Source: Macrostomum lignano | Lineage: Eukaryota | DNA: 64,000 nt | Direction of reading: 5' to 3' | NCBI GenBank assembly: GCA_002269645.1 | Contig: NIVC01002267.1 | Location: 94,247-158,246 of the forward strand | Shown here: in pieces, positions 20,701-59,023 of the stretch | How positions within the stretch are numbered: the stretch's first letter is position 1 | Layout of the letters: the number at the start of each line of letters is the position of its first letter | The notes under the pieces: generated by a model | Told to the model about the DNA's origin: nothing | Database searches by the model: none | What the model saw: the letters and a program-made list of their open reading frames with translations, nothing else | Made by a program: the position numbers and the translations under genes

Positions 20701-20785
20701 ATATTCCTATTTCTTAAAGTATGTTGTCTTTAGGCCGGTCACAAAAAATTGACCACCAGCATTCGTATTTTCTAATAATACAACA

Positions 20786-22930: not shown

Positions 22931-23215
22931 CTCTCTATTCCCTAGCGTTTCCCAATCTAAGTTTAGCTGTTTCTGTGTTAAAATGCAAAACTGAAGTTTC
23001 GAAGCCAGGAAAATGAAATTTGGCTTTTATTAGAAAGGAAAAATCCTCATAGCCGAGCAGCTGATTTTGTCAGTTGCATTTCACGCAGATTTGCTTGCTT
23101 GGAGTTTTAAGGCTTACAAAAAAATGAAGATGGTATTTATCTCATAGGAAGACAAAGAAGAGCAGCTGGCAGTCCAGCCTTGCAGAGAGAGTTCGGATTC
23201 AATTGAGCCCATCCA

Positions 23216-29600: not shown

Positions 29601-32600
29601 GTGCGTGGCTCAGATCGGACCTGTCCAACAGGGACATCTGCGTCATCCAATCCGAGGACCTTCTTCCTGGGAAGACCACCCTCATTGCCTCGGTTTACCT
29701 ACCAGGCGATGCTGCGGTCGTCCCCAGAGCCCTCGCTACGCTGGTAGAGCTCTGCTCTGCCAAAAACTACGAGCTCATGGTTGCCGGCGACATCAACGCC
29801 CACCACACTCACTGGGGCAGCACTGGCATTAATCAGAGAGGCGAAGACCTCCTAGCCTACGTTGCCTCTACGACCCTCGAGTTCTGCAACTCTGGGTCCA
29901 CCCCTACCTTTGACAACGGACGGTGGTCGGAGGTGATCGACGCTACGCTCGCAACGCCCAGACTCTACCAGAGTATTGGGGCGTGGCGGGTGCTTCCAGT
30001 GTCCTCACTATCGGATCACAAGTTCATCTCCTTCAACCTAATGGCCGCGCGTAGCGCAACTCGTGTTATGTGGAGACGGAACGCCAGAAATACGGATTGG
30101 GAAACCTTCGGGCTCGCCCTGAAGGAATTCCATCGGTCTCCTGGCCAACCATCCACGATCACGTCGTGCCGAGAGGCGGATGAGTGCGCGACTGTTTTGA
30201 CAGAGACGCTAACCGCCGCCTTTGAGGCGTCCTGCCCTTTAAAAGCCTATAAAGGGAAAAAATCGGCGCCGTGGTGGAATCCCGAGCTCGGCAACCTCCG
30301 TCGCAGGGCTAAGAGACTCCACCGCAGAGCAACTAAAACTAAGAGCCCTGCAGACCAAACCGCCTATCATGAAGCAATTCATGAGTTTAAAAGGCAGGTT
30401 AGGAATGCAAAGGCTCAAAAATGGCGACAATACTGTGAGGAGCTAGAGGGCTCACGCCCCACCTCCAGAGTTGTGAAAGCGCTCACGCTGGACAAAATGT
30501 CTAAGCTCTCCTCGGTCAAACGCACCGACGGTACGTCCACGGACAACCCAGGGGAAACGCTTGATGTAATGCTCACTGCGTTTTTCCCTAACGAGCCAGC
30601 TAACCAGACCACTCCGGATCACTCGGAGGGAGGTCACGCGCTGGCTGCATCTATCATCACGGAGGACCGCATTGTGAGAGCGGCAAATTCCTTCAAGCCT
30701 TTCAAAGCCCCAGGACCCGACGGCATTGTACCGGCCCTTCTAAGAGAGGCGGTTAAATGCCCAGGCTTCCTGCGCAAACTTTGCAGCCTTCTTCGGGCAT
30801 GCATCACGCTTGGTTATGTCCCGCAGGCATGGACCGAGGCAAAGGTGATCTTTATCCCTAAGCCAGGCCGCCCGGACTACCATTCTATCAAATCCTTCAG
30901 ACCGATCAGCTTGACCTCCTCCCTGGTCAAGCTGATGGAGAGACTGGTGCTTTGGCGCCTTCTCTCTGTTGAGCTGAAGAACAAACCTCTCAGCGAGAAC
31001 CAGCACGCTTTTCGGGCGGGTCGCTCCACTGAAAGCGCGCTGCACGTCCTGGTCGATAAACTCGAGAAGGCCGTGCTTGGTAGTGGCTTTGCTCTGGGGA
31101 TCTTCCTGGACATCATTGGCGCCTTCGATAACGTCCTCTTTGAGGCGTTCCGAAGAGCTCTTTGTGAGAGGCTAACGCACTCACATCTCACCAGATGGAT
31201 CATGTACATGATCAGCCATCGCACGGCCACCGCCAGTCTGCTGGGCTACCAGAGGACGGTCCCCGTCTGCAAAGGTAGCCCGCAAGGTGGGGTGCTGTCT
31301 CCAGTTCTCTGGAATATGGTCATCGATGAGCTCCTCCGGGATGTTCGGCCTGACCCCATTCTGAAAGTTGGATATGCGGACGATGTCACCGCGGTGGCAT
31401 CTGGTCCGTCCCCTGATACCCTCAGGGACCTTCTTCAGAACTTCATCTACGCTGCTGAGCAATGGGCGGACCGCTGTGGTTTAAGGCTCTCTGAGACTAA
31501 GACCGCAGCGATCATGTTCACCAGCAGGACCAAGTGGCAGATTCGGCCGCTCACGCTTTACGGAAGGGAAATCCCCTTCTGCAAGCAGACTAAATGTCTG
31601 GGTATTACCCTGGACCACAGGCTGAACTGGTCTCCCCACGTTCAAACAAAAGCCAAAAAGGCCTTCGCAGTCCTCGCGCAATTGCGCAGGGCCGTCGGCA
31701 CCACCTGGGGGCTCACCCCAAGCGCCTCTGGTGGATCTACACTGCAATGGTTAGGCCCGCTATCTCGTATGGCGGCCTGATCTGGGCTAGCGCCCTGCAG
31801 ATAAAGACCTGTCTAGAGGCTCTCAGGAGAGCGCAAGGGCGCGCTTGTCGCACGATCATGAGCGCCCCTCCGTCTGCTCCTTACGATGGCCTCAACGCCT
31901 TCCTCAACATTCCTCCGCTGGACATCTTTGTCCGCAGGGAAGCGGCTAAGACTGCCCGCCGTCTAGCTGACGCTGGCATTCGAATCCAGCCCCATAGGGC
32001 CATGGCTAAGCGCAAGCTTCTGCCCCACGCTGACCTCTGCCTCAAGGACTTGAGAGACAGCGGCGGGCTCCACGTCCTATCTGACGGCGAACCCCGCACT
32101 CTCAACCTCTTTCAGCGCTACAAGGTCACCATCCCCTCTAGGGATGCTGCCAATGACCACTGGAATTTCCAGGAGGTCCATTGCTACACGGACGGATCCA
32201 TCAAAGACGGTCGCGCCGGCTTTGGGGTCTGCATCATCATCAACGGCCGCGTAATTGCCACGCATGCCCAGCACACTGGTAGACTCTCCACAGTCTTCCA
32301 GAACGAAGTCCTTGCCATCAGCTCTTGCGCTGCAGAGCTAAACGCCAAGGTTACGAGAGGAAAGACTATTGTCATCCACTCCGACAGCCAAGCGGCCTTA
32401 CAGGCCCTTTGCCACACCACAACGAACTCCCGGACAGTCGCCGACTGCGCCCGGCAGCTCAACCTCCTGGCCAGAAGCAATACTGTCAGGCTGAAGTGGA
32501 TCCCAGGGCACGCAGGGTTTCCGGGGAACGAGCTGGCAGACACCCTCGCCAAGAGGGGCGGCTCTGGCTCTTTTTTCGGCCCTGCCCCCCTGGTCCCTAT

Positions 32601-35600
32601 GCCCTTGACAGTCATCAATCGTCAGATCGACGACTGGGCTGACTCCCTCCACAGGGACAGATGGGCGGGCACCCAAAACTGCCGGCAATCTCGTGCCGCG
32701 GTTCCTTGCCCGTCTCACAGGCTCAGAAACATCCTTCTGAACCAGAATCGGAAGGATATTCGAGCCCTTGTCATGACCCTTACCGGCCATGGCTACCTCG
32801 CCAGGCACTGCTTCCTCCGAGGCGACCTCGAGAGCGAAATTTGCCCCTTTTGCGAGTGCGACAATGAAGATGCTCAGCACTTTGTCTGTCACTGCCCTTT
32901 CTTTAACAGAGACCGGCTACGCTACCTCGGGCCGAACCCGTCCATTGACGAGGTTTGCCAGCCCGACAGCATCCCACGGCTCATCCAGTTCCTTCGGGCG
33001 ACTAGACGAGCCAGTTTCTTCCCAACGGAAGATCACGCTGCAGGACGGACCGGCGGACCACCCTGACCGGCCCCACGCCTCTGCCTGTCTGCGGGCCTTC
33101 AGGGGCTAGCGGAATGGGCGACCCTCGCCTCCCCGCTGTGTCTACGGACCACCCTGCAGCTAAGTCAAGTAAGTCAAGAAGAGCCCCAAATCGACTATAG
33201 TTTTCGTAGTACAGTTTGAAAGCCCCAGATCGGCCATAGATATGTATTTAACTCAAGGACAACTTGATCAAGTTATCAAGGCCGATCTTGATTTAACTCG
33301 TATCTAGAGCCCCAAATAGATCATAGATTTCGTAGCGCAGGTCGGGAGCCCCAAATTGACCATTGATTTGGTATTAGTCAGCGCCCCACATAGATAATAG
33401 ATTTCGTAGTGCAGGTCGAGAGCCCCAACTCGACCATAGATTTCGTAGTGCAGGTCGAGAGCCCCAACTCGACCATAGATTTCGTAGTGCAGGTCGAGAG
33501 CCCCAAATCGATCATAGATAAATGTATCGGTCATGTAATTTCGCATCGGTAATGTAGCGGTCAAAAGAATACAGAAAAGTTTCCTACCAATTTAGCTTCG
33601 GATCGTTCATTCCTCTTTTTTAGCGAGTCCAGCTCCGCCCTAAGAGTTGCGACATCTTCACCTGTGGCTTGCTGGAATTAAACAGTTTTTTAAGGATTCT
33701 ATGACTTCTAAGACTTCTATGTTTCGAAAAAAAATATTTGATGAATAAATACTCGGTCGTTTCGACTCACTTTCGAGATGCTCTTCTTTTGAGCCTGCGG
33801 ATTAGCAAAGCGAAATGAAAAAAATCATGAACAGAAGTTTACAGAGTGCAATTAAAGTGCAATTAAGATATTTAAAAAGATCTTAAAAAATCAGCCCTTC
33901 ATCTCACCCCTAGAGCCTTCGCGCTCTCAGCTTGAGCCTTGCGCTTCTCCTTAATGAGCTCCTTGGTAGATTTGTTCACTTTCTTATCGCTACATCTCTG
34001 CTTGCCCCACAGCTCGACAATCGTGTAGGAGTGCTGCAGGTACTCCAGCAGTTGCTTTGTGGCCGGTTTAAACGAGTATTGATGCTCGAATTCGAAACGA
34101 GGATTCACTGGCTTAGCCACTTCGCCCGTTTTTGTGTATTGATCTTCCAGGTAGAACTTATACTGACAGAAGTACTGCAATGTGCGGTTGTGCGAGAGAG
34201 TGAGTTGTGGGGTGGGTGTCGCATAGTGGGTTGGGTGTCCCACAGTGGGGTGGGTGTCACATTGGATAGCGAGATGGGTGTCGCATTGGATAGCGGGGTG
34301 GGTGTCGCATTGGATAGCGGGGTGGGTGTCGCATTGGATAGCGGGGTGGGTGTCACATTGGATAGCGAGATGGGTGTCGCATTGGAGAGCGGGGTGGGTG
34401 TCACATTGGATAGCGAGATGGGTGTCGCATTGGATAGCGAGATGGGTGTCGCATTGGATAGCGAGATGGGTGTCGCATTGGATAGCGAGATGGGTGTCGC
34501 ATTGGATAGCGAGATGGGTGTCGCATTGGATAGCGAGATGGGTGTCGCATTGGATAGCGGGGTGGGTGTCACATTGGATAGCGAGATGGGTGTCGCATTG
34601 GAGAGCGGGGTGGGTGTCAATGCAAAAGTTCGGCAAGCACTTACGCTTGCAAACTTAGCAGACAGGTCTCTACCGCCGTGAATTTTAATTTTGAAGTTCA
34701 AGGCCTGTCCAAGAAGGTCTTCTGGCTCGGCGTACTCATCCGTCAGCTCCTCCCAGTTGTCGCCGCAGGGTCTCAGCTCGATGTCCAACTTGCCCTGGTC
34801 TTCGCCGCGGAAGTCGGTGACATTGAAACTTTCGCTAACCTCAATTAGGTAGGCAAGGCTCTGCAGGTACACGTGAATGGTGCCAATGATGATTGGGGTG
34901 TCCGGCGGGTCCCAGAAAGGATCTTTCTCTTTGGCCAGCTCCCAGTCTGCCCCCTCAGTGTAGTTCTGGTACATGTCCTGCATCAGGTACTTTCGGTCGC
35001 TGAACTTTTCTTTGGACCAAAAGAACTCGTTGTTGTTGTCCAGGTTTTGTACGCTGACGCAGACCTGAAATATTTATTGATAGGTCTTCTGAAGTCTAAT
35101 TTAGTCACTTAATTTGGTTGGGTGAATGCTCGGTTCAGTGAATGCTCGGTTCAGTGAATGGTCGGTTCAGTGAATGCTCGGTTCAGTGCATGCTCGGTTC
35201 AGTGAATGCTCGGTTCAGTGAATATCAAGTACAGAATGCTTCATCCCCAGGCTCACCTCAGTCCGGCCTTCGCCCTCTCTCAGTCCCCTGCCCTGGGCGG
35301 AGACCAGCACCAGTTCGAACCAAACCCGCCGGTCCATCTCCTCAGACATGGCGTTGGCCTCTTGCAGCTGCGGGTACAGCTTCACCAAATCGTCCATGAG
35401 TAGCATGTCCTCTGGAATGAGTAGCGAATCGGGGAAAGCTTGGGTTTATGCTTGTTTGTTGAGTTAGCAAAGAACAGATGCTGGCAAACACCCGACACTC
35501 GGTCCTCTGAAACTTCTCAGTAGCAATCCGACCCACTCAGATTAGCGTCTCTTCTCAGCTCTCCTCTCTTTTTTTCTTTCCTCTCCTCTCTCCTCTACCC

Positions 35601-38600
35601 TCTCCCCTCCCCCTCTCCCCTTCTCTCTCCTCTCTCTCATCTCCCCTCTCCCCTCTCCTCTCTTCCCTCCTCTCTCCCCTCCTCTCTCATCTCCCCTCTC
35701 CCTTCTCCTCTCTCAATTTCTCTCTCCCCTCCTCTCGTCTCTCCTCTCATCTCCCCGCTCGTCTCCCCTTTCCTCTCTCATCTCCCCTTCTCTCCCCTCT
35801 CCACTCTTATCTCCCCTCTCTCCTCCCTTATTCTCTCTCTGGCCCACAGTTATGCGGGCCAGATTCTATATCTGGCATTTAACTTAAAAAGTTTGCCGAC
35901 CCCAGACAGACTGACCTGCACTGTTGCTCTTGGCCTTGTCACCCAACAGTCCCATCACCCCGGAACTCTCAGCAATCTCAGACTGGGCCTCTTCAAATGT
36001 CGGCGGCGAGACGTCCTGCCCGGATTTGACCTGCTTCGCGTAGTCAACCGGATGATGGAAGACGTACAGGTGATTGGTCCCGAACAGGACTCGGTCGTGA
36101 TGGCGCAGCTGAGTCTCCTGGTTCACCTCCTGGCCGTTGACGAACACTTTGGCGAGATCGATAGGCGTTACCGTGACAGAGCCGTTGACATTCTTCAGAA
36201 CAGCGTGTCTGGCTTGGATGCTGTTGTTAAGGGCGAGGAGGTGGAACTTTTTAAGTTCAGTAGCAATCGAGTGGCTTGGTGTAACGGAGTGGGATGGGTG
36301 TCTAAATGATTAGGGTGGTTGTCTAAGGGAGTGGCTTTGGGTGTCTAAGGGAGTGGGGTGGGTGTCTAAGGAAGTGGGGTGGGTGTCTAAGGAAGTGGGG
36401 TGGGTGTCTAAGGAAGTGGGGTGGGTGTCTAAGGGAGTGGCTTTGGGTGTCTAAGGGAGTGGGGTGGGTGTCTAAGGAAGTGGGGTGGGTGTCTAAGGGA
36501 GTGGGGTGGGTATCTAAGGGAGTAGGTTGGTGTCCAAGGGAGTGGGGTGGGTGTTTAAGGGAGTGGGGTGGGGTGGGGTGGGTATCTAAGGGAGAGGGGT
36601 TGGGTGTCTAAGGGAGCTAGTGTGGTGGGTGTCTAAGGGAGTGGGGTGGGTGTCTAAGAAAGTGGGTGGGTATCTAAGGGAGTGAGGTTGGTGTGCAAGG
36701 GAGTGGGGTGGGTGTTTAAGGGAGTGGGTGGATGTCTAAGGGAGTGTGGTGGGTGTCTAAGGGAGTGGGGTGGGTATCTAAGGGAGTGGGTGGATGTCTA
36801 AGGGAGTGGGGGGTCTTTGTCAAACGAAACTTTGACTTTTCTCTCACTTGACTCCCTTCAGCTGGAAGTCGCCGTCTCTGCCCACAGTCTGCACGGCTCC
36901 GGGATCAACGAATTGCACGATCATGCCGGACAGAGCTGCGTCCTCGTTAAGATTCCACAGATGCGGCACGTTCTTCTTTCGCTCGCTCTCCGCTTTTCGC
37001 TCCTGAATTTGTTCCTGCGCTTCTGCCTGCGCCTGGGCCAGCTTCTCAGCCCAGGCTCGCTCCATCGCTTCCATCTCCTCTTGATTCTTCTTCATCAGCT
37101 CGCGCATTCGCTCCTCGGACTCAGCCTGGTCCTCGCCGGTGTCACCGCCGCCGTCGGTGATGTCCCCGCCGCCACCTCCTCCTGCCTTGAGCATCGCCAT
37201 CAGTCTGGAGTTCTCCTCTCTGAGCTCCCGGATCAGCTTATCAGTTGGGCTCTCGTTCACCACGGCTTTAGTCTTGATGGCTTTGGCTCGATCCGCGAAG
37301 CGCAGAGTTGACAGGGTCTCGTCGAAGTTGATGTCGGCGGGAGAGAGGGCGGCGATCTGCAGTAGGGACGTTTGATGGTGTGGGTTTTTAAATTTGATGG
37401 TGTGGGATTTTAGTTTGATGGTGTGGGTTTTTGGTTAAATGGTGTGGGTTTTTGGTTTAATGGTGTGGGTTTTTAGCTTGATGGTGTGGGATTTTAGTTT
37501 GATAGTGTGGGTTTTTGGTTTGATGGTGTGGCTTTTTGGTTTGATGGTGTGGGTTTTTAAATTTGATGGTGTGGGTTTTTTAATTTGATGGTGTGGTTTT
37601 TGGTTTGATGGTGTGGGTTTTTTAATTTGATGGTGTGGTTTTTGGTTTGATGGTGTGGGTTTTTGAATTTGATGGTGTGAGTTTTTAGTTTGATGGTGTG
37701 GGTTTTTGGTTTTATGGTGTGGGTTTTTGAATTTGATGGTGTGAGTTTTTAGTTTGATGGTGTGGGTTTTTGGTTTGATGGTGTGGGTTTTTTGGTTTGA
37801 TGGTGTGGCTTTTTGGTTTGATGGTGTGGGTTTTTGAATTTGATGGTGTGAGTTTTTAGTTTGATGGTGTGGGTTTTTGGTTTGATGGTGTGGGTTTTTT
37901 GGTTTGATGGTGTGGCTTTTTGGTTTGATGGTGTGGGTTTTTGAATTTGATGGTGTGAGTTTTTAGTTTGATGGTGTGGGTTTTTGGTTTGATGGTGTGG
38001 GTTTTTTGGTTTGATGGTGTGGGTTTTTTAATTTGATGGTGTGGTTTTTGGTTTAATGGTGTGGGTTTTTGGTTTGATGGTGTGGGTTTTTAGTTTGATA
38101 GTGTGGGTTTTTGGTTTTATGGTGTGGGTTTTTGAATTTGATGGTGTGGGTTTTTGGTTTGATAATGTGGGTTGTTGGTTTAATGGTGTGGGTTTTTAGT
38201 TTGATGGTGTGGGCTTTTGGTTTTATGGTGTGGGTTTTTGGTTTGATGGTGTGGGATTTTTAATTTAATGGTGTGGGTTTTAGTTAGATGGTGTTGGATT
38301 TTGGTTTGATAGTGTCGTTTTAATCGTTTTGTAGTGAGGGGGTTTGCTACAGGCTACATTCACCGCTGTCACAAATTGTCATCAAGAAGAGCCTACCATG
38401 ACAGTTTTACTGTTGCCTCCAAGAGCATTCTGCAGCAGCTTGGTCAGCACGGAGTCCCTGAAAGGGACTGGAAAAGGAACAAAAACGATTATAATCATAA
38501 TATTCACAATCAGAATATAATTAGAACGCACAAAGGTTGACACTGACCCATCACTTTGGAGTTTCCCGAGCTCTGATCCGCCAAAGCTTTGATGCAGTTG

Positions 38601-38904
38601 CCCAGCGTGCTGAGCGACAGATTGATGGCGGATCCCTCCTTCAGGCGGTCCCCTGTGGCGCCAGTTGATTCCGCTCGCTCGCTGCCGGTTGGTAAGTAGT
38701 TAGCAGTAGTGTGTTTCGCTTGTTTAGGTTTCAATCACTTATAATTTATTTAGACATATAAATAGGCGAATAACTAACTTACTAACTGACTGACTAACTA
38801 ACTAACTAACTGACTAACTAACTGTCAAACTAACAGACTAACTAACTGACTAATTAACTAACTAACTAACTAACTGACTAATTAACTAACTAACTAACTA
38901 ACTG

Positions 38905-38935
<31 letters not shown>

Positions 38936-40414
38936 GACTAATTAACTAACTGACTAATTAACTAACTAACTAACTAACTTACTGACTAACTAACTAACTA
39001 ACTTTATCCTCACCTGCCAGCCAAGTCCACCAGATTCATAACCGAAGTTTTGGTCATGTTTTGACCACCGGCGCCTTGGCTCTTCTGCACGAAGCTGATG
39101 GCCACAATGGTATGCGCCCGGCTGCTGGTGGCGTTCATGTTGGTGGCCGCCACAGTGCGGTTGTGCGAGCCGTCCGCAATTTTGGCTTCAATCTGAGCAT
39201 AGCTGCTCACGGGTGCGATAGTCAGCTGCTCAACGTAGAAACCTTTTTTTGGATGCTGACGAACTTTGAGTCCGCCAACCGTGGATTTAGTTACTAGCAG
39301 GTCGCGCACCTGCTCATTGTAGATCTCAGTCATGGACAGGGACACTTGGAACTCCTCTCCAGCCTGCAAACTCGGCCGTTTCTCGTCTATTGCCCGGAAC
39401 AGTTCTTCGCACGCGACGGGCACAATGCCCTTGTTAGCGCCGTACCCAATCATTGAGTAGGATTTGCCGCTGCCAGTCTGACCGTAGGCGAACAGGCTGC
39501 AGTTGTAGCCTTTCCACGCGTTGTCAAGGACGCCCCGGCCAAGGTCGTCGAATACGCGTTTCTATGCATGTTATTCGGCAGCATGATTCGCGATCGAGTT
39601 ATCTTGATGGGGACTAAATCAGGGGTCGGCAAACTTTTTACCTCAAGGGCCCAGATAAAAAGATGAAAGAAGGTATGAGAGGTCGAGATAAGAGATCGAT
39701 GAGAGAAGAGATGAGAGAAGAGAGAAGAGGAAAGGGAAAAGACAAACCCTGAGCTATTGTGAAGTTCCAAAGTACCCGAGAGCCGGATAGTGAGGTTTTT
39801 CAGGCCGGAGTTTGCCAACCCCTGGGCTAAATTGATAAGTACCTCGTATAGGAAATTCATAAGCATTATGCATATTTGAGTTTATCCAGATAGTAATTAT
39901 TGCTGTACCGTAATTAAGACAAATTGGTTTATAAAGAACTCATCTTTTTGGCGGTTAACCTACAGTCTTCTGAGACATAATTGATTTAGATAGAAATCCA
40001 GCCAAAATGTTTCATTACTTAGCTAATTATTCTGAATTAAAACGAATGGGAAACCCACCTGATCAGCATATTTAGAATTGGCGGGCTCCAGGTAACCATT
40101 TGTCTTCTCTTTAAATCCATCGTGCGACCAATAGGAATAGTCGAATGCAAACTTTTTATCCTGACCTGAACTCGGATCCGTGATGCAGGTCTGGTTGCCG
40201 CTCATCTGAATGATCAGCTTGCTCTGCCGGCTGACTTCGCGGTCATTGTGTCAGAATATTAAGTTTGCGAATAGAGTTAAGGAGTTAAACATAAAAATAA
40301 TTTTGAGTTGAGCTCAACTTAAGTTAAACCTAGAGATAAAAAAATACATACCTATGAATACAGTTTCAATGGAAACACACAATTTCAAATAAAAACTAAA
40401 GGATATAAAATATA

Positions 40415-40445
<31 letters not shown>

Positions 40446-40816
40446 TTATAATAATAATAATAATAATATTAATAATGATATAAATAATATTTTACTTTAA
40501 CTTTTTACTAATTATTAATGATCCATCATACCCTTATTAATATTCGCTATTTGCCTGTAACAACAATGCCCATAAAATAAAGTAAGATTTTATAGATTTT
40601 TTACAATTTCTCATCTAGGTTTTTGCCCTGCAGAGTAGTGCTGCTTTCAATCGTATGCAAACGAGAACATTTTTGATCATACATTACATACATGGTATTG
40701 GTAAAAAAATAAACAAAATGAATTAAGTGGCATTGAAGTTTTAAGTATATTTAAATTGAATGACAAAAGGATATGAATGGCCGCACACGGACTGCAACCT
40801 TTACGTTGTCGGCCAT
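26694..40816 (-). CDS. KIF28: Kinesin-3 family, KIF28-like; 11 exons (40816-40775, 40247-40059, 39561-39014, 38681-38548, 38467-38397, 37356-36848, 36220-35916, 35411-35257, 35064-34645, 34174-33908, 26879-26694)
   Basis: [14 protein letters not shown]|[62 protein letters not shown], an FHA region ([16 protein letters not shown]) and EKDPFWD. All phases are consistent. Intron 1 is AT-AC, the rest GT-AG. The KIF28 subfamily assignment is by recognition, not by search. Confidence 0.9.
27220..27418 (+). repeat. About 39-bp GAGCCCCAAATC..ATAGATTTCGTA array, left part (interrupted by the LINE)
   Basis: The same unit continues at 33179-33520. Confidence 0.85.
27419..27672 (+). ncRNA. HDV-like self-cleaving ribozyme at the 5' end of the retrotransposon
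   Basis: P1 GCACGCG/CGCGTGT with a G1-U wobble, P3 GGG/CCC, L3 TACTCGT, P1.1 AC/GT, P4 GGCAG/CTGCT, J4/2 CAGAC and P2 CCCA/TGGG. Confidence 0.85.
27894..29360 (+). CDS. Retrotransposon ORF1 (488 aa; central DUF4780-like domain, low-complexity ends, no CCHC knuckle seen)
   Basis: Intact ORF directly upstream of ORF2. The central region [34 protein letters not shown] resembles the ORF1 of LOA/R1-type elements. Confidence 0.85.
   Translation: MASSASLTPAEAGAPATPAGDSGTSAAPPGADGLAAGSAGDMPARATGPSAEARRTRNQRRNERRRRLRGTAGRPPAEGEPREGEAAVGPKGTTATPAPQDTTPAGEPPSIPATSAAGPSGTAATNYASKVKLQPAVIVFGEEQDLTADELDSAWRTIDAALIDQLLAGRPVSVVKSAKTDGCIFIWCSSEESSRNLRELLPKLNWPKKLGKLVFASEGERQKTQRFRVWIPAGSAIKSGDQLRQILLKLHPDLKVNGLLHHATSRKEKGATVILGLSDDWAKRLPLKSTIHIGLTQLTILRCEERKADEAKNAKASETGTGAQAPPAKKPRQTADPMPGKAVRAAETGNRNRRPARSTRRSGLIQRALDQAKNLRAHRERARASRAPPQQPEGQTLSGEAPTDWFESVTHQEAGATRIDLTDEAEGTGSDSTEARRRGDGNVHAGLTSAEDSTATLTAEDAETPMEVCGSPTTEKEEDDLLNDSPTA
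29363..33066 (+). CDS. Retrotransposon ORF2: AP endonuclease, reverse transcriptase, RNase H, CCHC; one frameshift at about 31716-31719
   Basis: LQINLQH, LVQEPW, GDINAHH, SDH; KAPGPDG, RPISL, QGGVLSP, YADD; YTDGS, SDSQAAL, WIPGHAG..GNELAD; [14 protein letters not shown]. Confidence 0.95.
33179..33520 (+). repeat. About 39-bp array, right part
   Basis: GAGAGCCCCAACTCGACCATAGATTTCGTAGTGCAGGTC units. Confidence 0.9.
34240..34620 (+). repeat. 24-bp minisatellite (GGTGTCGCATTGGATAGCGAGATG) in a kinesin intron
   Basis: Direct periodicity. Confidence 0.95.
35120..35225 (+). repeat. 16-bp repeat (TCGGTTCAGTGAATGC)
   Basis: About 6 units in a kinesin intron. Confidence 0.85.
36290..36810 (+). repeat. 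About 22-bp minisatellite (GGGTGTCTAAGGGAGTGGGGT)
   Basis: Direct periodicity in a kinesin intron. Confidence 0.9.
37370..38310 (+). repeat. About 21-bp minisatellite (GATGGTGTGGGTTTTTGGTTT)
   Basis: Direct periodicity in a kinesin intron. Confidence 0.95.
38770..39004 (+). repeat. (TAAC)n microsatellite
   Basis: Direct. Confidence 0.95.
39620..39824. mobile_element. Non-autonomous hAT-type MITE
   Basis: TIRs CAGGGGTCGGCAAAC / GTTTGCCAACCCCTG (14/15 match) and an 8-bp flanking duplication GACTAAAT (39612-39619) / GGCTAAAT (39825-39832). Confidence 0.85.
40248..40774 (-). other. U12-type (minor spliceosome) AT-AC intron, kinesin intron 1
   Basis: 5' splice site ATATCCTTTT at 40774, branch site TCCTTAAC at 40283-40276, 3' end GACAC at 40248; removal restores RVRPF|NDRE. 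Confidence 0.93.
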
Positions 40817-42799
40817 CGAGTCGTTTGACCTTTGGGATGGTGTAAGACGGAGACAAAATAATAGTGCAATTCTTTTTCAGTTTGAAAAAACTAATATCCA
40901 TTGAAAATACTCAATACAGCTCCTACATGCATCTAAAGAAAACTATTAAGCAGTATAAAAAATAATAAACTACAAAAAAGTTTCAATTTTGTATTACATC
41001 AAAATTCCTAAAATAAATCGATTTTTTTGTTATAATTGCTTGCGTTGCAAACCGGGTACAGCAATCTTAATTTTCTATGGTGACGACCTACTGATCTGAA
41101 GCATTATATCTAATACTTACTTACTTAGACCTACCTACTTATGCTCCTTGGTTCCGTAGCGTACGTAACATAAAAAACGAATTAAAAATTTTCGGACAGT
41201 TTCTCATGAAAACGAAAAGTGCATGTAGCTCGGTAGTCCTTTAATTTATGCTCACAATTCCAGACTTCTTTATATGCAGTCGAAGCATTTAAACCATTAA
41301 TCAATGGATTTTTATCATACTTCAATTTAACTTGACTACTTGTAGAAGCTAAGATGTAACTCGAAATATAGACATAATTATTGGAAAATGTGTTATGCAC
41401 AAAATGCGTGTATTGCGCTTTGATACTCGTAGAATTCAGCTTGGATGGCATGCACGGCTTAGAAAATAGCAATATCTACTTAAATTTTACAGTGCATTTA
41501 CAGTTACCATGTTTGAAGTTTAAACTTCCAAATAATTACATGTGCACATACGTGAGTCAAAACATGCAGGGGGTGTTGTACGCGTACATCAGACACAAGG
41601 GCAACTAAAGCAACGTATATCATGTACTTTAGTAGTCTTTGATTCGAAATCAGTTACTGTAGTTACATGTATTCATACATATCAGCATGCAGCGTTCATC
41701 ATCAAGCTGATCTGTAATCCCACTGTCAAGTACTGCAAGAAAGTCAAATCTTTTGTCACATTGTCGTCTAGACATCAATGTACAACTTGCACTCGGGCGT
41801 GCAGTAAGAAAATTAACACGAGCATGTGATGAAGACTAATTGAGTCAGGCAAAAAATGTTCTGAGCACAGAAAAACAAAAAGAAATAATTTATATTTCAG
41901 GCCGAATGCTCAACGCCTAACTACATGTGTAAGGAACAAAAATTATTATATACATGTAGATTATTTTATACGGCATGTTCAGTATATATAAGCTCAGACC
42001 GGAACTCTGATTGCTCATTATTCAATATAGGACACAAATAAAGAAGTTTTCTGAAATGCTAAAAATGTAAATTGTTTACGATGCTTATATTTAGTAATTA
42101 TAGAATCAAGCAAATCTACACGTACCCTCGTATAGGCCCATAGTACGAAGTATTATAATTTTTTCTCTATAGATCAGCTATATAACTCAAGAACAAACGA
42201 CCCAGGAAACCAAAAAAATACGTGCAATTTCGTGACTTTTTATTAACAGCCTCCCGATAAAAACTGCAGTGTGAATCAACTATCACAGGAGATCGTGCTT
42301 ATTTACGCTTAGACAGTTGCAGTGGGGGTCTCAGGAGAGACGTCAGTTGGAGACGTCAGTCATCTCTGGGGAGACGTCAGTTGGCCCGATTGCAACGCTG
42401 CACACTATAAATTAGCAACTCTGTTGATTCATTACAGTTTTTTTCTGAACGTAATAAGTAAAAATCTCTGGAATTTTTCGACAATTTACTTTTAGTTGGG
42501 CAGGAGACTATGGGACACATTTATCAGATAATACGAATATTTAGAATCGCAACACGCGAGTATCAGATCGAGCATACACAGCTTGCTGACACAAATTTCA
42601 AGCGGGAAAGAGAGCGCAATTAAAATGAGATTAAGACGGCCGGACTGCGATTCGAAAAGTTGACAAGCAGATTTAGATTTTATATATTTAGAGATAAAAG
42701 CCTCAGTTAGGAGATGAGGGGAGAATTTGGGAGAGGATGAGAGGAAGTAGAGATGAAAAGAAGGAGAAAAGAAAAAAGAAAAACACATTGAGACGGTAA

Positions 42800-43650
42800 A
42801 AGTTGAAAGGGAGAAAGGGAGAGGGGGAGAGGAAGAGAGGGAGGGAGGGAGAGAGATCGAGAGGGGGAGATTATGAGAGAGAGGAAGAGATGTAGAGGGG
42901 GAGAGAGGGAGAGAGGGAGAGAAAGAGAGAGGGAGAGAGGGAGATAGGGAGAGAGGGAAAGAGTGAGAGAAGAAGAGGAGGGAAAGGAGAGGGAGAGAGG
43001 GAGGGAGGGAGAGGGAGAGAAGAAGAGGAGGGAGAGGAGAGGGAGACAGCAAGATTTGGAGAGAGATCGAGAGAGGGAGATTATGAGAGAGAGGAAGAGA
43101 TGGAGAGGGGGAGAGGGAGAGAGGGAGAGAGGGAGAGAGGGAGAGAGGGAGAGAGGGAGAAAGGGAGAGAGAGAGGGAGGGAGAGAGGGAGAGAGGGAGA
43201 GAGAGGGAGGGAGAGAGGGAGAGAGGGAGAGAGAGGGAGAGAGAGAGAAGGAGTGAGGGAGAGAGGGAGAGGGAGAGAGGGAGAGATGGAGAGAGGGAGA
43301 GGAGAGAGGGAGAGAGGGAGAGAGAGAGAGGGAGAGAGGGAGAGAGGGAGAGAGAGGGAGAGGGAGAGGGAGAGAGGGAGAGAGGGAGAGGGAGAGAGGG
43401 AGAGAGAGAGGGAGAGAGGGAGAGAGGGAGAGAGGGAGAGAGAGGGAGAGAGAGAGAAGGAGTGAGGGAGAGAGGGAGAGGGAGAGAGGGAGAGAGGGAG
43501 AGAGGGAGAGAGGGAGAGAGGGAGAGAGGGAGAGAGGGAGAGAGGGAGAGAGGGAGAGAGGGAGAGAGGGAGAGAGGGAGAGAGGGAGAGAGGAGAGAGG
43601 GAGAGAGGGAGAGAGGGAGAGAGGGAGAGAGGGAGAGAGGGAGAGGGATA
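42800..43650 (+). repeat. GA-rich (GGGAGAGA)n low-complexity tract
   Basis: Direct. Confidence 0.95.
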
Positions 43651-43681
43651 CAGGGTCTTGCAGAGCAGCTGTCAGTCCAGT

Positions 43682-44014
43682 TCACTTCTTAGCTCCGTGC
43701 TGATGCTGATGATGGATTTTCCCCACCGCATTGCCCACCCGGATCCCTCTCGGCCGACTGCCGTCGTTGGCGAAGTCGCTGGCGTCGGCGGCGCCACCGG
43801 CGGTATCACTGCCGCGACATTTTTTGCAGTAGCAGGAGACGGCGATGGCCACAATGAGCAGCAAGACGGCAGCCCCGATGATGAGGTAGTGCCACCATTC
43901 CAGCTTCACGGCCTGCTGCGCAGCGGCAGATTCTGGCTGTAGAAGCAGCAGCAGAAGCAGCGGTGGCCAGAAATTAGCGAAAGAAATCGCAAATTGCAGA
44001 CTGGCGGCTCGCAT
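43682..44014 (-). CDS. Small (about 110 aa) type I single-pass membrane protein of unknown function
   Basis: Signal-like [32 protein letters not shown], a tiny ectodomain [29 protein letters not shown], and juxtamembrane SCYCKKCR. Confidence 0.65.
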
Positions 44015-44360
44015 TTTGGCTAGATTGGACTCAGCTTCGGGAATCTGATAATCTGATAGATGAGGAGAAATCTTTTGTCTTCTGCTTTCAGCTAAAGCGA
44101 TGGGGTTGGTAGGCGGTTGCACCTGGCCCTAACCGGATTTTGATTGGCTCCCCACGTCATCCATTTTTATTAATTCGGAGTCGAAAAACTCCCACAATAG
44201 AAGTTGAGGGGAAAGCATATCGATCGGGAAGTTGTGGGCCACGGCCTTCTCTTGTGTATTTAGCTGCTATAAAAGTGCATCAATCTGTACGATGATTGCT
44301 GAGAACATGCTGTGTAGCAGTTGCCTCAAAGAGTTTGCCTGTCCTGTAAGATCGATGCAT

Positions 44361-44727
44361 AGGGGGGGCCGTAGCCCAGCGCGGTAGCGCAGCTGCTCTG
44401 GTGTGCCAGCGACCCAGGCTAGGCTCGATTCCAAGTGCAGTCACATTAATTTGGGGCTGAATTGGAATATCGGCTTGGCTCTGCTCGTGCAATTAACGGT
44501 CTTGAGAGCCAACCCCCCAAGGCGCAGTGAAGTGTACATGCCTAACGATAAAATAAGTTAGGGCCGCTGTACACTCCTGTGTGAGTGTGTGCCTGCGTAC
44601 GTATCCGCGCGCTTGTGTGCCTGCTCAGGGGAGTCGGCGGAATGGGCAGTAATGCCTCTCGCCGGTTGTGTGACAATGTCGCTTAAAGTGCGCCAGGGTG
44701 CATACAGCCCCCTGCCTCCAATAAAAA
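44361..44727 (+). mobile_element. tRNA-derived SINE (family B), copy 1
   Basis: A box GTAGCCCAGCGCGGTAG, B box GGCTCGATTCC, AATAAAAAA tail and a 13-bp TSD AAGATCGATGCAT (44348-44360, 44728-44740); second copy at 50421. Confidence 0.9.
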
Positions 44728-44974
44728 AAGATCGATGCATGAATCTGGTTATTAAATTCTGTTGACAGTCAAGCCTCTGGCTAACCTGGGACTTTGTATG
44801 CATTATTGTTTGCATTAAATTATTCAAACTGGCATGGCTTCTTTGCTTTGGGAAAAAATCTTTTTTAGGGGGGTGGGGATTAGATTATTTCTGGTTGAAG
44901 TCATTTACGCTGTAGGGCTTCTTCGAATTAGAGGTATAGTGGGATAATACTAGCATAGATTTGAATACGGACAC

Positions 44975-45770
44975 ACACAGGGGAGATAAGGACAGAGATA
45001 GAGACACACAGGAGAGATAAGGACAGAAATAGAGACACACAGGAGAGATAAAAACAGAGATAGAGACACACATGAGAGATAAGGACAGAGATAGAGACAC
45101 ACAGGAGAGATAAAAACAGAGATAGAGACACACAGGAGAGATAAGGACAGAGATAGAGACACACAGGAGAGATAAAAACAGAGATAGAGGCACACATGAG
45201 AGATAAAAACAGAGATAGAGACACACATGAGAGATAAGGACAGAGATAGAGACACACAGGAGAGATAAAAACAGAGATAGAGGCACACATGAGAGATAAA
45301 AACAGAGATAGAGACACACAGGAGAGATAAGGACAGAGATAGAGACACACAGGAGAGATAAGGACAGAGATAGAGACACACAGGAGAGATAAAAACAGAG
45401 ATAGAGACACACAGGAGAGATAAGGACAGAGATAGAGACACACAGGAGAGATAAAAACAGAGATAGAGGCACACATGAGAGATAAGGACAGAGATAGAGG
45501 CACACAGGAGAGATAAGGACAGAGATAGAGACACACAGGAGAGATAAAAACAGAGATAGAGGCACACATGAGAGATAAGGACAGAGATAGAGACACACAG
45601 GAGAGATAAAAACAGAGATAGAGGCACACATGAGAGATAAGGACAGAGATAGAGGCACACAGGAGAGATAAAAACAGAGATAGAGGCACACATGAGAGAT
45701 AAGGACAGAGATAGAGGCACACAGGAGAGATAAGGACAGAGATAGAGGCACACATGAGAGATAAGGACAT
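44975..45770 (+). repeat. 31-bp minisatellite (GAGATAAGGACAGAGATAGAGACACACAGGA)
   Basis: Direct periodicity. Confidence 0.95.
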
Positions 45771-46309
45771 ATTTGTGAATATTTCTCATCACTAACTTCT
45801 GCACAAATTGCAAGCCAGATGCCAAGTCTGCATAAATGGGATTACAGATAATAAAAGTGAGCTGACTGCCATATCAGCTGACCCAATACCCGATCAATTA
45901 GCTGACAAAGCGAGTAATATTTTAGCGGGCACAATGGACTTACTAACTTAATTATAGGTTAGCTTGGGGGTACATTGATCTATTCTATAAATACTTGTGC
46001 CCACACAATTATGCCAAAATGATTTGCAACCAGATCTTATGCCCTCACTATGTCCTCGCAGAATGGTAATTCCTAGTACCGAGAATCAATGCCCCCCTCT
46101 CAAATCCCACCCAGGTTTGTTTGACTAGCCAAGGGCTATTCATTGCTCAGGGGAAATTGTGTGTTTGCTGGGTAGGCATCGGTTCTTCTGGCCAGAAAGA
46201 GGAAGATATTCCATATAGGGGAATTCTTGCGGCTCTGTTGCATACCGATAGTGCACTGAAGATTGAATTCTTGGACGGCTGACTTCGGGAGTCTAGAAGT
46301 GGGTGAAAC

Positions 46310-47140
46310 AATTAGTGAGACAGTGAGAGAATGAGTGAGACAGTGAGAGAATGAGTGAGACAGTGAGATATTGAGTGAGACAGAGGGAGAATGAGTGAGA
46401 CAGTGAGAGAATGAGTGAGACAGTGAGATATTGAGTGAGACAGTGAGAGAATGAGTGAGACAGTGAGATATTGAGTGAGACAATGAGAGAATGAGTAAGA
46501 CAGAGGGAGAATGAGTGAGACAGTGAGAGAATGAGTGAGACAGTGAGATATTGAGTGAGACAGTGAGAGAATGAGTGAGACAGTGAGATATTGAGTGAGA
46601 CAGTGAGAGAATGAGTGAGACAGTGAGATATTGAGTGAGACAATGAGAGAATGAGTAAGACAGAGGGAGAATGAGTGAGACAGTGAGAGAATGAGTGAGA
46701 CAGTGAGATATTGAGTGAGACAGTGAGAGAATGAGTGAGACAGTGAGATATTGAGTGAGACAGTGAGAGAATGAGTGAGACAGTGAGATATTGAGTGAGA
46801 CAATGAGAGAATGAGTAAGACAGAGGGAGAATGAGTGAGACAGTGAGAGAATGAGTGAGACAGTTAGATATTGAGTGAGACAGTGAGAGAATGAGTGAGA
46901 CAGTGAGATATTGAGTGAGACAGTGAGAGAATGAGTGAGACAGTGAGATATTGAGTGAGACAGTGAGAGAATGAGTGAGACAGTGAGATATTGAGTGAGA
47001 CAGTGAGAGAATGAGTGAGACAGTGAGATATTGAGTGAGACAGTGAGAGAATGAGTGAGACAGTGAGAGAATGAGTGAGACAGTGAGAGAATGAGTGAGA
47101 CAGTGAGATATTGAGTGAGACAGTGAGAGAATGAGTGAGA
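46310..47140 (+). repeat. 20-bp minisatellite (GAGTGAGACAGTGAGAGAAT / ...GATATT)
   Basis: Direct periodicity with two alternating variants. Confidence 0.95.
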
Positions 47141-47864
47141 CTACAAGATGAGGTAGTGCGTGTCAGTCACGAATGGTTAACATGTGGGCAAGAAGTAGAA
47201 TCCCATGTTACTTCAGTCGCAGGTGTCAAATATAAATTTTTTAATGCTAAAGCGAATTTTGTCGGTGAGAATTTTAGGAAATTTTATTCCAACCAAAATC
47301 GCGCTTCCATCTCTGGGAAAAAAGTATCAAATTCCCCAACTGAAAGCCTCATCAACGCCCAGTTTCCTGCGGCAGAGCTGTAACGGGAGGAAAAATGCAA
47401 AAATGGGTGAAAATGTTCTCATACATGATACAGGATACAGGAAGTGCCAGAAGCCCGGCTGTCTGCTTCTGCTGGATCTGCTTTCCATTGTTTGACACTG
47501 ACGGCCTTCCTTGGCTACGAGCGGTGTCAGTATTTGTACTTCTATATAATCTCACTCATACTCTTTAAACACAAGCCTATCAGATCCCACAAGAACAGTG
47601 TACTGCTGGGAGATTGTATCTATCCATGTCTATGTGAGTCAATCATTATTTCCGCCTGAATGAACTGCAGTCAGTCAATTCAATCTGAGCTCTCTGTGCT
47701 CAGCTCACAGGAACAGGCCTATGAAATATTCAATAACTGCAGCATTGACCAACTGGGGTTGTGATGAATTTAACCACACTTTATTGTTGTTAAGACCGGG
47801 ACATGCGGAGTTCATTAGCAACCTGTACCTGTCTGTTTCCTATATAGGCATAGGAGAGTGGAGT

Positions 47865-48345
47865 CACACTGTGAGACAGGCAGAGAGTCACACTGTGAGA
47901 CAGGCAGAGAGTCACACTGTGAGACAGCCATAGAGTCACACTGTGAGACAGGCAGAAAGTCACACGGTAAGACAAGCAGAGAGTTACACTGTGAGACAGG
48001 CAGAGAGTCACACTGTGAGACAGGCAGAGAGTCACACTGTGAGACAGGCAGAGAGTCACACTGTGAGACAGCCATAGAGTCACACTGTGAGACAGGCAGA
48101 GAGTCACACGGTAAGACAAGCAGAGAGTCACACTGTGACACAGCCAGAAAGTCACACTGTGAGACAGCCATAGAGTTACACTGCGAGACAGGCAGAGAGT
48201 CACACTGCGAGACAGGCAGAGAGTCACACTGCGAGACAGGCAGAGAGTCACACTGTGAGACAGCCAGAAAGTCACACTGTGAGACAGCCATAGAGTCACA
48301 CTGTGAGACAAGCAGAGAGTCACACTGTCAGACAGCCATAGAGTC
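47865..48345 (+). repeat. 24-bp minisatellite (GAGAGTCACACTGTGAGACAGGCA)
   Basis: Direct periodicity. Confidence 0.95.
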
Positions 48346-48351
48346 ACTGCC

Positions 48352-50745: not shown

Positions 50746-51121
50746 AACATGAACATACATCACGAAAGTACAAATAACTTTAAACTCAAAATGAATTTCC
50801 AACTAGTCAAAGTTTTAATAACGCTGCTTATAGTCTACTGTTTCTCGTTTTCGGTGACTGCGTACGAGCCGTACTTAAGTGCGTAGACAAAAATGAAAAT
50901 AAAGAGTAAACTATTAATATAGTATGAAAGTAGATGTGCCTGTTTAAGGGGATGCATACTGCTTGATTTAAGTGCAGCCATCTGCAACAGAAGCAGCAGT
51001 TCCTGGTGTTTGCCTGTAGGATCCTGGCCGCTAAGCCGCAATAGGCTGCAGTATTTACAGAAAAGCTGCCACTCAACAAATGAGTTCGTTTAATCTCAGT
51101 GTTTGACTAAGCAGCACCGCT

Positions 51122-58986: not shown

Positions 58987-59023
<37 letters not shown>

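What the first reader, a model, noticed from the sequence alone, without database searches (positions are those of the whole stretch)
40248..40774. Textbook U12-type AT-AC intron splitting the kinesin RVRPF|N motif
Seen: the ORF track misses the kinesin N-terminus because exon 1 ([14 protein letters not shown], 40816-40775) is joined by an intron with no GT-AG ends. It begins ATATCCTTTT, has a perfect TCCTTAAC branch site (40283-40276) and ends in AC at 40248, restoring PF|NDRE in phase 0. The branch A lies about 29 nt from the 3' end and two earlier AC dinucleotides must be skipped; the first would add an in-frame TGA and the second a frameshift. Known: these are minor-spliceosome consensus signals, and the minor spliceosome has been lost repeatedly in animals, including, as I recall, several flatworm lineages. 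Inference: this organism keeps a functional U11/U12/U4atac/U6atac system, and annotation pipelines probably truncate this gene at MSGNQ.
Basis: partly seen in the sequence, partly recalled or inferred. Interest (0 to 1): 0.75.

Follow-up and report, generated by a model that had tools for sequence, protein, structure and literature searches.

The report
Conserved minor-spliceosome intron in a kinesin gene
The first intron of a kinesin-3 (KIF28-type) gene in this probably flatworm genome is a genuine, anciently conserved AT-AC intron of the rare U12 class; it is an ordinary member of a known class, except that its best branch site sits unusually far from the 3' end.

Summary
On the minus strand, exon 1 (40816..40775, [14 protein letters not shown]) is followed by ATATCCTTTT. 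TCCTTAAC lies at 40283..40276 and the intron ends in AC at 40248. Joining 40775 to 40247 restores RVRPF|NDRE in phase 0.

An in-frame TGA (40253..40251), with no AG nearby, rules out a canonical acceptor.

Six orthologous KIF28 loci carry a U12-type intron at exactly this codon boundary: a coral, a priapulid, a scallop, a snail, a tubeworm and an acorn worm. Four are AT-AC and two are the GT-AG subtype. A nematode orthologue has no intron there.

The other five mapped introns of the window gene are GT-AG, and seven exons give an intact 599-residue kinesin-3 N-terminal part.

The host is probably a macrostomid flatworm but not M. lignano. Schistosomes, also flatworms, are already known to have the minor spliceosome.

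One thing is not textbook. The consensus branch site is 29 nt from the 3' end, whereas orthologues have 10-14 nt and experiments give 10-20 nt. An AC 14 nt downstream of it would give a premature stop.

Verdict: a real U12-type intron, a new member of a known kind, of low to moderate interest. Splicing and minor snRNAs could not be tested here.

The parts
40775..40816 (-). Exon 1 coding part of the KIF28-type kinesin: ATG at 40816, [14 protein letters not shown] (beta-1 strand of the motor domain)
   Evidence: The same peptide precedes the orthologous intron in seven other loci.
40248..40774 (-). Intron 1, U12-type AT-AC, 527 nt, 77% A+T, phase 0
40766..40774 (-). U12-type 5' splice site ATATCCTTT (9 of 9 matches to RTATCCTTT)
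   Evidence: Consensus as given in PMC1635337 and PMC8199999.
40276..40283 (-). Consensus branch-site motif TCCTTAAC. The U12 pairing score is 17 of 19 for CTCCTTAAC. After branch A40277, 29 nt remain to the intron end.
40258..40266 (-). Degenerate branch-site-like motif AAACTTAAT (score 10). It lies 11-12 nt from the 3' end, which is where the orthologues have their branch site.
   Evidence: That it is used as a branch site is inference.
40263..40271 (-). Second weak branch-site-like motif TTCGCAAAC (score 12), 16 nt from the 3' end. Its terminal AC (40264-40263) is the first decoy acceptor, 14 nt after the consensus branch A.
40251..40253 (-). TGA in the exon-2 reading frame. It forces the acceptor to lie at 40250..40247, so no AG acceptor is possible.
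40248..40249 (-). 3' splice site AC (context cAC|AAT)
40059..40247 (-). Exon 2: [19 protein letters not shown]...KYADQ, followed by a GTGGGT donor
39014..39561 (-). Exon 3 ([10 protein letters not shown]...VDLAG, contains the P-loop GQTGSGKS); flanking introns are GT-AG
38548..38681 (-). Exon 4 ([17 protein letters not shown]...); GT-AG introns
38397..38467 (-). Exon 5 ([24 protein letters not shown]); GT-AG introns
36848..37356 (-). Exon 6 (end of motor, neck and coiled coil)
35916..36220 (-). Exon 7 (FHA domain)
33899..35406 (-). Further C-terminal exons of the same gene, including the KIF1B-domain region. Exon boundaries were not mapped.
40398..40406 (-). Second exact ATATCCTTT inside the intron, directly after an (ATT)n run. 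It is not preceded by coding sequence.

Best explanation
**What it is.** Intron 1 (40774..40248, minus strand) of a kinesin-3 gene of the KIF28 type is a U12-dependent (minor-class) intron of the AT-AC subtype. It was inherited from the common ancestor of cnidarians and bilaterians.

**How it most likely works (inferred).**

1. U11 snRNP pairs with ATATCCTTT at the 5' end.
2. U12 snRNP pairs with a branch-site element near the 3' end.
3. The U4atac/U6atac.U5 tri-snRNP completes the spliceosome.
4. Exon 1 is ligated to exon 2 at 40775^40247.

The product reads ...VRVRPF-NDRE..., so the first beta strand of the motor domain is restored.

**Shown here.** The sequence signals, the impossibility of a canonical acceptor, the intact downstream gene, and positional orthology with U12-type introns in six other phyla-level lineages.

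**Inferred here.** That the junction is used in vivo, and that the organism has the minor snRNPs.

**Open.** Which adenosine is the branch point. The candidates are the consensus TCCTTAAC, 29 nt upstream of the 3' end, or one of two weak motifs at 11-16 nt.
For: - **5' splice site.** ATATCCTTT matches the consensus at 9 of 9 positions, directly after the conserved RVRPF codon.
- **Branch site and 3' end.** TCCTTAAC lies within 40 nt of the 3' end, there is no polypyrimidine tract, and the intron ends in AC.
- **No canonical acceptor.** The exon-2 frame is closed by TGA 40253..40251 and there is no AG nearby, so the conserved [14 protein letters not shown] can be reached only through a non-AG acceptor at 40248.
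- **Orthologous introns at the same position and phase**:
  - Pecten: ATATCCTTTT...TCCTTGAC-9 nt-AC
  - Saccoglossus: ATATCCTTTT...TCCATAAC-9 nt-AC
  - Desmophyllum: ATATCCTTTG...TTCCTTAAT-9 nt-AC
  - Priapulus: ATATCCTTTT...TTCCTTAG-13 nt-AC
  - Biomphalaria: GTATCCTTTG...TCCTTAAC-10 nt-AG
  - Lamellibrachia: GTATCCTTG...TTCCTTGAC-9 nt-AG
- **Nematode comparison.** The Ancylostoma orthologue has no intron there. That nematodes lack minor splicing is background knowledge; it was not checked here.
- **Spliced N-termini elsewhere.** NCBI models for Pecten, Biomphalaria and Priapulus, and an intron-free 2-kb assembled contig (P0004), encode the contiguous RVRPFN-x-RE N-terminus.
- **Rest of the gene.** Introns 2-6 are GT-AG. 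Seven exons give an uninterrupted 599 residues with full-length Kinesin, Kinesin_assoc and FHA matches.
- **Flatworm precedent.** Schistosoma has U11, U12, U4atac and U6atac, and has minor introns (PMC2770079, PMC10639083).
Against: - No transcript evidence is available for this organism.
- No minor snRNA gene lies in the 64-kb window. This is uninformative for the genome as a whole.
- The consensus branch site is 29 nt from the 3' end, outside the 10-20 nt range reported for minor introns (PMC8199999). Orthologues have 10-14 nt.
- An AC sits 14 nt after the consensus branch A, an ideal distance, and using it would give PF-LIF-stop.
- The motifs at an orthodox distance from 40248 pair poorly with U12: scores of 10 and 12, against 15-17 in orthologues.
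Confidence: 0.85

Rival explanations
1. The intron is U12-type, but the consensus branch site mainly directs splicing to the nearby AC at 40264-40263, or to another A-N dinucleotide 10-20 nt downstream. The resulting mRNA carries a premature stop (PF-LIF-TGA). Productive use of 40248 would then be a minor or regulated outcome, so this would be an unproductive-splicing switch or a leaky gene.
For: - Reported rule: the branch-to-3' splice site distance is 10-20 nt, with an optimum of 11-13 nt (PMC8199999).
- The terminal nucleotide of AT- introns is tolerant of substitution (PMC1635337).
- The AC at 40264-40263 lies 14 nt after branch A40277.
- All candidate sites in that range give TGA 40253..40251 in frame, or a frameshift.
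- No RNA structure shortens the 29-nt spacer.
Against: - The gene is otherwise intact over at least seven exons, and its sequence is conserved. That would not be expected if most transcripts were null.
- The decoy sites have a purine at -3 (aAAC, tGAC), whereas the true site and all four AT-AC orthologues have YAC.
- Classifiers accept branch sites up to 40 nt from the 3' end (PMC11347168).
Confidence: 0.12
2. The signals are relics. The lineage has lost minor splicing, or this copy is a pseudogene, and the intron is not removed. Any protein would start at the internal Met (MSGNQ...).
For: Minor splicing has been lost or reduced in several animal lineages (PMC10639083). No snRNA evidence exists for this species.
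Against: - The 5' splice site matches at 9 of 9 positions, and a consensus branch site and an intact exon 1 with its ATG are all retained. The one nematode orthologue examined has no intron at this position.
- A protein starting at MSGNQ would lack the beta-1 strand and the first 28 residues of the motor. The full Pfam profile match needs exon 1.
- There are no frameshifts or stops in 599 residues.
Confidence: 0.03
3. Exon 2 is joined to some other upstream exon by the major spliceosome, and the 40816..40775 ORF is a coincidence.
For: None found.
Against: - The in-frame TGA at 40253..40251, with no AG between it and 40247, excludes any GT-AG acceptor that keeps the conserved NDRE... residues.
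- Exon 1 encodes exactly the peptide that precedes this intron in all orthologues.
Confidence: 0.01

Closest known systems
U12-dependent (minor-class) introns of the AT-AC subtype, for example the conserved AT-AC intron in domain I S1 of animal sodium and calcium channel genes (PMC6259924; consensus in PMC1635337 and PMC8199999)
   Same: - The 5' splice site is ATATCCTTT.
- It has a TCCTTAAC branch motif, no polypyrimidine tract and a terminal AC.
- It is deeply conserved in position across animal phyla.
- It is a single U12 intron among GT-AG introns in the same gene.
   Different: The consensus branch motif is 29 nt from the 3' end, not 10-20 nt. A second exact 5' splice-site-like nonamer lies inside the intron.
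The orthologous intron 1 of KIF28-type kinesin genes in Pecten maximus, Saccoglossus kowalevskii, Desmophyllum pertusum and Priapulus caudatus (AT-AC), and in Biomphalaria glabrata and Lamellibrachia satsuma (U12 GT-AG subtype)
   Same: - Identical position (after the Phe codon of RVRPF and before Asn) and identical phase 0.
- The same class of splice signals.
- The flanking protein sequence is conserved.
   Different: - Orthologues have a single branch motif 10-14 nt from the 3' end.
- The window has the strong motif 18 nt further upstream, and only degenerate motifs at the orthologous distance.
- Intron length varies from 110 to 1740 nt; here it is 527 nt.
The KIF28 paralogue group found in vertebrates and some molluscs (Callipepla L005, Lottia L008)
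   Same: The same kinesin-3 N-terminus ([10 protein letters not shown]), with an intron in the same few codons.
   Different: That intron is U2-type GT-AG and lies 6 nt downstream: RPF-SQ|RE (gttagt...acag) and RPF-NQ|RE (gtagga...ccag). It is not a U12 intron.

Membership tests
U12-type (minor-class) spliceosomal intron | 5' splice site /RTATCCTTT at intron positions +1 to +9 | tested here: met
   ATATCCTTT at 40774..40766, 9 of 9 matches
U12-type (minor-class) spliceosomal intron | Branch-site motif TTCCTTRAY near the 3' end | tested here: met
   cTCCTTAAC at 40284..40276, 8 of 9 matches, U12 pairing score 17 of 19
U12-type (minor-class) spliceosomal intron | Short branch-to-3' splice site distance (10-20 nt, optimum 11-13; PMC8199999) | tested here: inconclusive
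   - The consensus motif leaves 29 nt to the 3' end. That is outside the experimental range but inside the -40..-1 window that classifiers use (PMC11347168).
- Only weak motifs (scores 10 and 12) lie at 11-16 nt.
- Orthologues have 10-14 nt.
U12-type (minor-class) spliceosomal intron | No polypyrimidine tract before the acceptor; terminal dinucleotides AT-AC or GT-AG | tested here: met
   The last 28 nt are TCTATTCGCAAACTTAATATTCTGACAC, with no pyrimidine run. The termini are AT...AC.
U12-type (minor-class) spliceosomal intron | Positional conservation with U12-type introns in orthologous genes | tested here: met
   Six orthologous loci carry U12-type signals at the same codon boundary.
U12-type (minor-class) spliceosomal intron | Removal in vivo by the U11/U12/U4atac/U6atac spliceosome; junction present in mRNA | not testable with these tools
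   - No transcript data or whole genome is available for the source organism.
- The window holds no minor snRNA genes.
- The exact proteins are not in the public collection.
Kinesin-3 family, KIF28 type | N-terminal kinesin motor followed by a neck/Kinesin_assoc region, an FHA domain and a KIF1B-type region; best reciprocal similarity to KIF28 | tested here: met
   - Pfam: Kinesin 2.4e-102 (full profile), Kinesin_assoc and FHA; KIF1B.
- Top named homologues are KIF28P of Pecten, Biomphalaria, Ciona and Priapulus at 64-73% identity.
- No phylogenetic tree was built.

The most novel reading that the evidence does not exclude
This lineage may splice a U12-type intron from a consensus branch site about 29 nt from the acceptor, skipping a well-placed AC. 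That would relax the 10-20 nt rule established in human systems. Alternatively, it may use the strong distal and weak proximal branch sites as a switch between an unproductive (premature-stop) and a productive KIF28 mRNA.
Probability: 0.15. Interest if true: 0.45.

Novelty: new member of a known kind. Interest (0 to 1): 0.3.

Why it matters
- **Annotation.** Exon 1, which encodes the first beta strand of the motor, is systematically lost from automated KIF28 models in many invertebrate genomes, including the closest named relative, Macrostomum lignano. The predictors evidently do not model AT-AC introns. This locus would be truncated in the same way.
- **Minor splicing in a free-living flatworm lineage.** The intact signals are indirect evidence that a macrostomid-like flatworm still has minor splicing. 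I found no paper in the held library that addresses this for Macrostomum. It fits what is known for schistosomes.
- **An evolutionary marker.** The six orthologous introns show that this intron dates back at least to the cnidarian-bilaterian ancestor. It has switched subtype (AT-AC to GT-AG) in a snail and a tubeworm, and it is absent from a nematode orthologue.
- **A test case for 3' splice site choice.** The odd branch-site geometry is a small but concrete case for testing how the minor spliceosome picks its 3' splice site.

Tried and rejected
- **Rfam scans.** I scanned the window at gathering thresholds and at E<=1. There were no snRNAs. The only hits were sub-threshold mir-580-like matches in a tandem repeat and one weak snoRNA-like match. 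This says nothing about the whole genome.
- **Identifying the organism.**
  - The ORF at 61270..62112 has no detectable homologues, so that search was wasted.
  - Exact look-up of ten window ORFs found none in the collection.
  - The LINE ORF2 search gave its best named local matches in Macrostomum lignano, but only at 63-73% identity.
  - I conclude the organism is related to M. lignano but is not M. lignano.
- **DNA of the closest orthologue.** The M. lignano protein P0013 is not on record with a contig. Conservation of the two branch motifs in a close relative could therefore not be checked.
- **Other U12-type introns in the window.** The other RTATCCT[TC] matches are at 54829, 32759 and 213 on the minus strand, plus the internal 40406. 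None follows a recognisable exon.
- **A hairpin bringing the distal branch site closer to the acceptor.** None is predicted.
- **The intron as a repeat insertion.** No second copy of any part of it occurs in the window, so the target-site-duplication idea for the second ATATCCTTT remains speculation.
- **Literature.** No paper in the held library mentions both KIF28 and U12, or both Macrostomum and the minor spliceosome. Dietrich et al. 2001, the primary source for the distance rule, is not held, so I cite the rule from the review PMC8199999.
- **A typing error, corrected.** A first Pfam run used a hand-typed protein with three wrong residues in exon 6. I repeated it with the programmatically assembled sequence and got the same result.
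Full report
**1. The observation**

Reading the minus strand confirms each coordinate in the finding.

- An ATG at 40816 opens [14 protein letters not shown], ending at 40775.
- The next bases are ATATCCTTTT (40774 onward).
- TCCTTAAC occupies 40283..40276.
- The sequence cAC ends at 40248, and AAT GAC CGC GAA (NDRE) starts at 40247.
- After the branch adenosine A40277 there are 29 nt to the intron end.
- The AC at 40264-40263 would append TTA ATA TTC TGA, an in-frame stop. The AC at 40251-40250 would add two bases, a frameshift.

The motifs are rare. RTATCCTTT is expected about 1.1 times and TCCTTAAC about 2.5 times in the whole window on both strands. Finding one exactly at a conserved exon end and the other within 40 nt of the required acceptor is not a chance event (roughly 1e-8).

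**2. Why the acceptor must be non-canonical**

The exon-2 reading frame is closed by TGA at 40253..40251, and there is no AG between that stop and 40247. The residues just downstream ([14 protein letters not shown]...) are conserved in all homologues. They can therefore be translated only if splicing lands within three bases of 40248. This argument does not depend on any motif.

**3. The gene**

I mapped seven exons:

| Exon | Coordinates (minus strand) |
|---|---|
| 1 | 40816..40775 |
| 2 | 40247..40059 |
| 3 | 39561..39014 |
| 4 | 38681..38548 |
| 5 | 38467..38397 |
| 6 | 37356..36848 |
| 7 | 36220..35916 |

- Introns 2 to 6 all have GT...AG ends; only intron 1 is AT...AC.
- The assembled 599 residues contain no stop.
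- They match Pfam Kinesin over the full profile (residues 10-355, E = 2.4e-102), then Kinesin_assoc and FHA. The motor match spans the exon 1/exon 2 junction.
- A KIF1B-type region follows in ORFs further downstream.
- The best named homologues are KIF28P of Pecten maximus and Biomphalaria glabrata (73%), Ciona (69%) and Priapulus (64%).

**4. The organism**

- In the lineage-specific parts of the protein, the closest sequence is Macrostomum lignano A0A1I8GX08. It shares 75% identity over exon 2, 89-91% over exons 4-5 and 72% over the neck, against 51-81% for the snail.
- A non-LTR retrotransposon lies next to the gene (27894..33066, + strand). Its best named local matches are also in M. lignano, at 63-73%.
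- Neither similarity is high enough for M. lignano itself. None of ten window ORFs is present verbatim in the public collection.
- The window therefore most likely comes from a macrostomid-like flatworm whose proteins are not in the databases. This is an inference.

**5. Comparative test of the intron**

I fetched the genomic loci of homologues and located the RVRPF exon and the following exon. Six orthologues have a U12-type intron at exactly the same codon boundary and phase.

| Species | Intron length | 5' end | 3' end |
|---|---|---|---|
| Pecten maximus | 1740 nt | ATATCCTTTT | GTCCTTGACtgtatctAC\|AAT |
| Saccoglossus kowalevskii | 860 nt | ATATCCTTTT | CTCCATAACatttcctAC\|AAT |
| Desmophyllum pertusum | 1014 nt | ATATCCTTTG | TTCCTTAATaattctcAC\|AAT |
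| Priapulus caudatus | 471 nt | ATATCCTTTT | TTCCTTAGttcgcgtaatcAC\|AAT |
| Biomphalaria glabrata | 110 nt | GTATCCTTTG | ATCCTTAACaaagtattAG\|AAT |
| Lamellibrachia satsuma | 1581 nt | GTATCCTTGT | TTCCTTGACcacccgtAG\|AAT |

- The intron therefore predates the split between cnidarians and bilaterians. It switched from the AT-AC to the GT-AG subtype in a snail and a tubeworm.
- The nematode Ancylostoma has no intron here; VRVRPFNDREKSRK is contiguous in the genome. Nematodes lack minor splicing, which is general knowledge I did not test here.
- A second paralogue group, seen in the bird Callipepla and in Lottia P0050, has an ordinary GT-AG intron 6 nt further downstream: RPFSQ|RE and RPFNQ|RE.

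**6. Annotation consequence**

- The Mactra, Saccoglossus, Desmophyllum, Ridgeia and Argonauta models begin at the first Met after the junction.
- The Pinctada and Callipepla models splice in a spurious upstream exon.
- The M. lignano entry begins at RERTRGSK.
- For Saccoglossus and Desmophyllum, I found the missing exon 1 with its ATATCCTTT donor upstream of the annotated start.

**7. What is not textbook**

- Reviews give a branch-to-acceptor distance of 10-20 nt for minor introns, with an optimum of 11-13 (PMC8199999). Another review gives 12-15 (PMC3291851). I recall the primary source, Dietrich et al. 2001, as showing that longer spacings activate nearer cryptic sites, but that paper is not in the library.
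- The six orthologues have 10-14 nt. In the window the consensus motif is 29 nt from the end.
- I used the hydrogen-bond score of PMC8848931, on which TTCCTTAAC scores 19:
  - the distal motif scores 17;
  - AAACTTAAT, at 11 nt and positionally equivalent to the orthologues' branch site, scores 10;
  - TTCGCAAAC, at 16 nt, scores 12;
  - the orthologues' motifs score 15-17.
- No secondary structure is predicted that would shorten the spacer.
- AT- introns tolerate several terminal nucleotides (PMC1635337). If the distal site were used under the human rules, every acceptor within range would give a premature stop or a frameshift.
- Three possibilities remain: the distal site works over 29 nt in this lineage, a weak proximal site is used, or a sizeable share of transcripts is unproductive.
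- The intact, conserved gene argues that productive splicing occurs. The decoy sites have a purine at -3, whereas the real site and all AT-AC orthologues have YAC. Whether that matters is speculation.
- Classification pipelines would still call this intron minor, because they search for the branch site from -40 to -1 (PMC11347168).

**8. The minor spliceosome in this organism**

- The window contains no U11, U12, U4atac or U6atac gene at curated or permissive thresholds. That means nothing for a whole genome.
- The claim that the machinery is retained rests on the preserved signals.
- Precedent supports it. Schistosoma mansoni and S. japonicum have all four minor snRNAs (PMC2770079), and Schistosoma is listed among lineages with minor introns (PMC10639083).
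No held paper treats Macrostomum and minor splicing together.

**9. Verdict**

- The feature is real, and the interpretation as a U12-type AT-AC intron is well supported (confidence about 0.85, pending transcript evidence).
- It is a new member of a known kind. It is an orthologue of an intron already built into NCBI gene models of other invertebrates, although no held paper mentions KIF28 together with U12.
- Its value is practical (annotation, and as a marker of minor splicing in a free-living flatworm lineage). The branch-site geometry is one modest curiosity.
- Interest: 0.3.

Noticed in passing
window 40398..40406 (-) and about 40418..40475 (-): A second exact ATATCCTTT lies inside the intron, directly after a long (ATT)n microsatellite. 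For this base composition the chance is about 1%. It could be a target-site duplication of a roughly 368-nt insertion at the 5' splice site, or a decoy U11 binding site. No second copy of the intervening sequence occurs in the window.
   Followed up: partly
L003 about 9040..9098, L004 8915..8944; proteins P0005, P0006, P0013, P0022, P0025, P0037, P0062: Public KIF28 gene models in many invertebrates lack exon 1. They begin at the first Met after the U12 intron or splice in a spurious exon. The real exon 1, with its ATATCCTTT donor, sits upstream of the annotated start in Saccoglossus and Desmophyllum.
   Followed up: yes
L005 7568..7603 and about 10110; L008 6025..6060 and about 12865: A KIF28 paralogue group (the bird Callipepla and Lottia P0050) has a U2-type GT-AG intron 6 nt downstream of the U12 position (RPF-SQ|RE and RPF-NQ|RE). 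It could be an old conversion with a boundary shift, or an independent intron.
   Followed up: partly
window 27894..33066 (+): A non-LTR retrotransposon lies just 3' of the kinesin gene. It comprises ORF1 (488 aa, no Pfam hit), an endonuclease plus reverse transcriptase ORF (807 aa) and a separate RNase H ORF (490 aa) in another frame, so ORF2 appears broken. The nearest named relatives are in Macrostomum lignano, at 63-73% local identity.
   Followed up: partly
window 5787..7040 (-); 10411..14203 (+); 17834..19442 (+); 56502..59580 (-): Neighbouring genes: an alpha-tubulin exon (417 aa ORF that lacks the first about 35 residues), exons of a protein kinase (Pkinase and Pkinase_C matches), tetraspanin exons, and an acetyl-CoA transporter (Acatn, SLC33A1-like).
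   Followed up: partly
window about 2800..3500, 15500..16400, 20700..23000, 33300..34650, 36300..36850, 37400..38300, 42500..48500, 51100..52300, 58400..59000, 62200..62900: Very long tandem repeat arrays with strong GC and AT skew fill introns and intergenic DNA. They create long spurious ORFs on both strands. Composition swings between 33% and 62% GC per 2 kb.
   Followed up: no
window 11112..12801 (+): Several sub-threshold Rfam matches to mir-580 (27-35 bits against a gathering score of 83) recur at regular spacing inside a kinase intron. They are most likely a tandem repeat that folds into hairpins, not miRNA genes.
   Followed up: no
window 61270..62112 (-): A 280-aa ORF, with a poly-Q run and otherwise complex sequence, has no detectable homologue in the 5.8-billion-protein collection.
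   Followed up: partly
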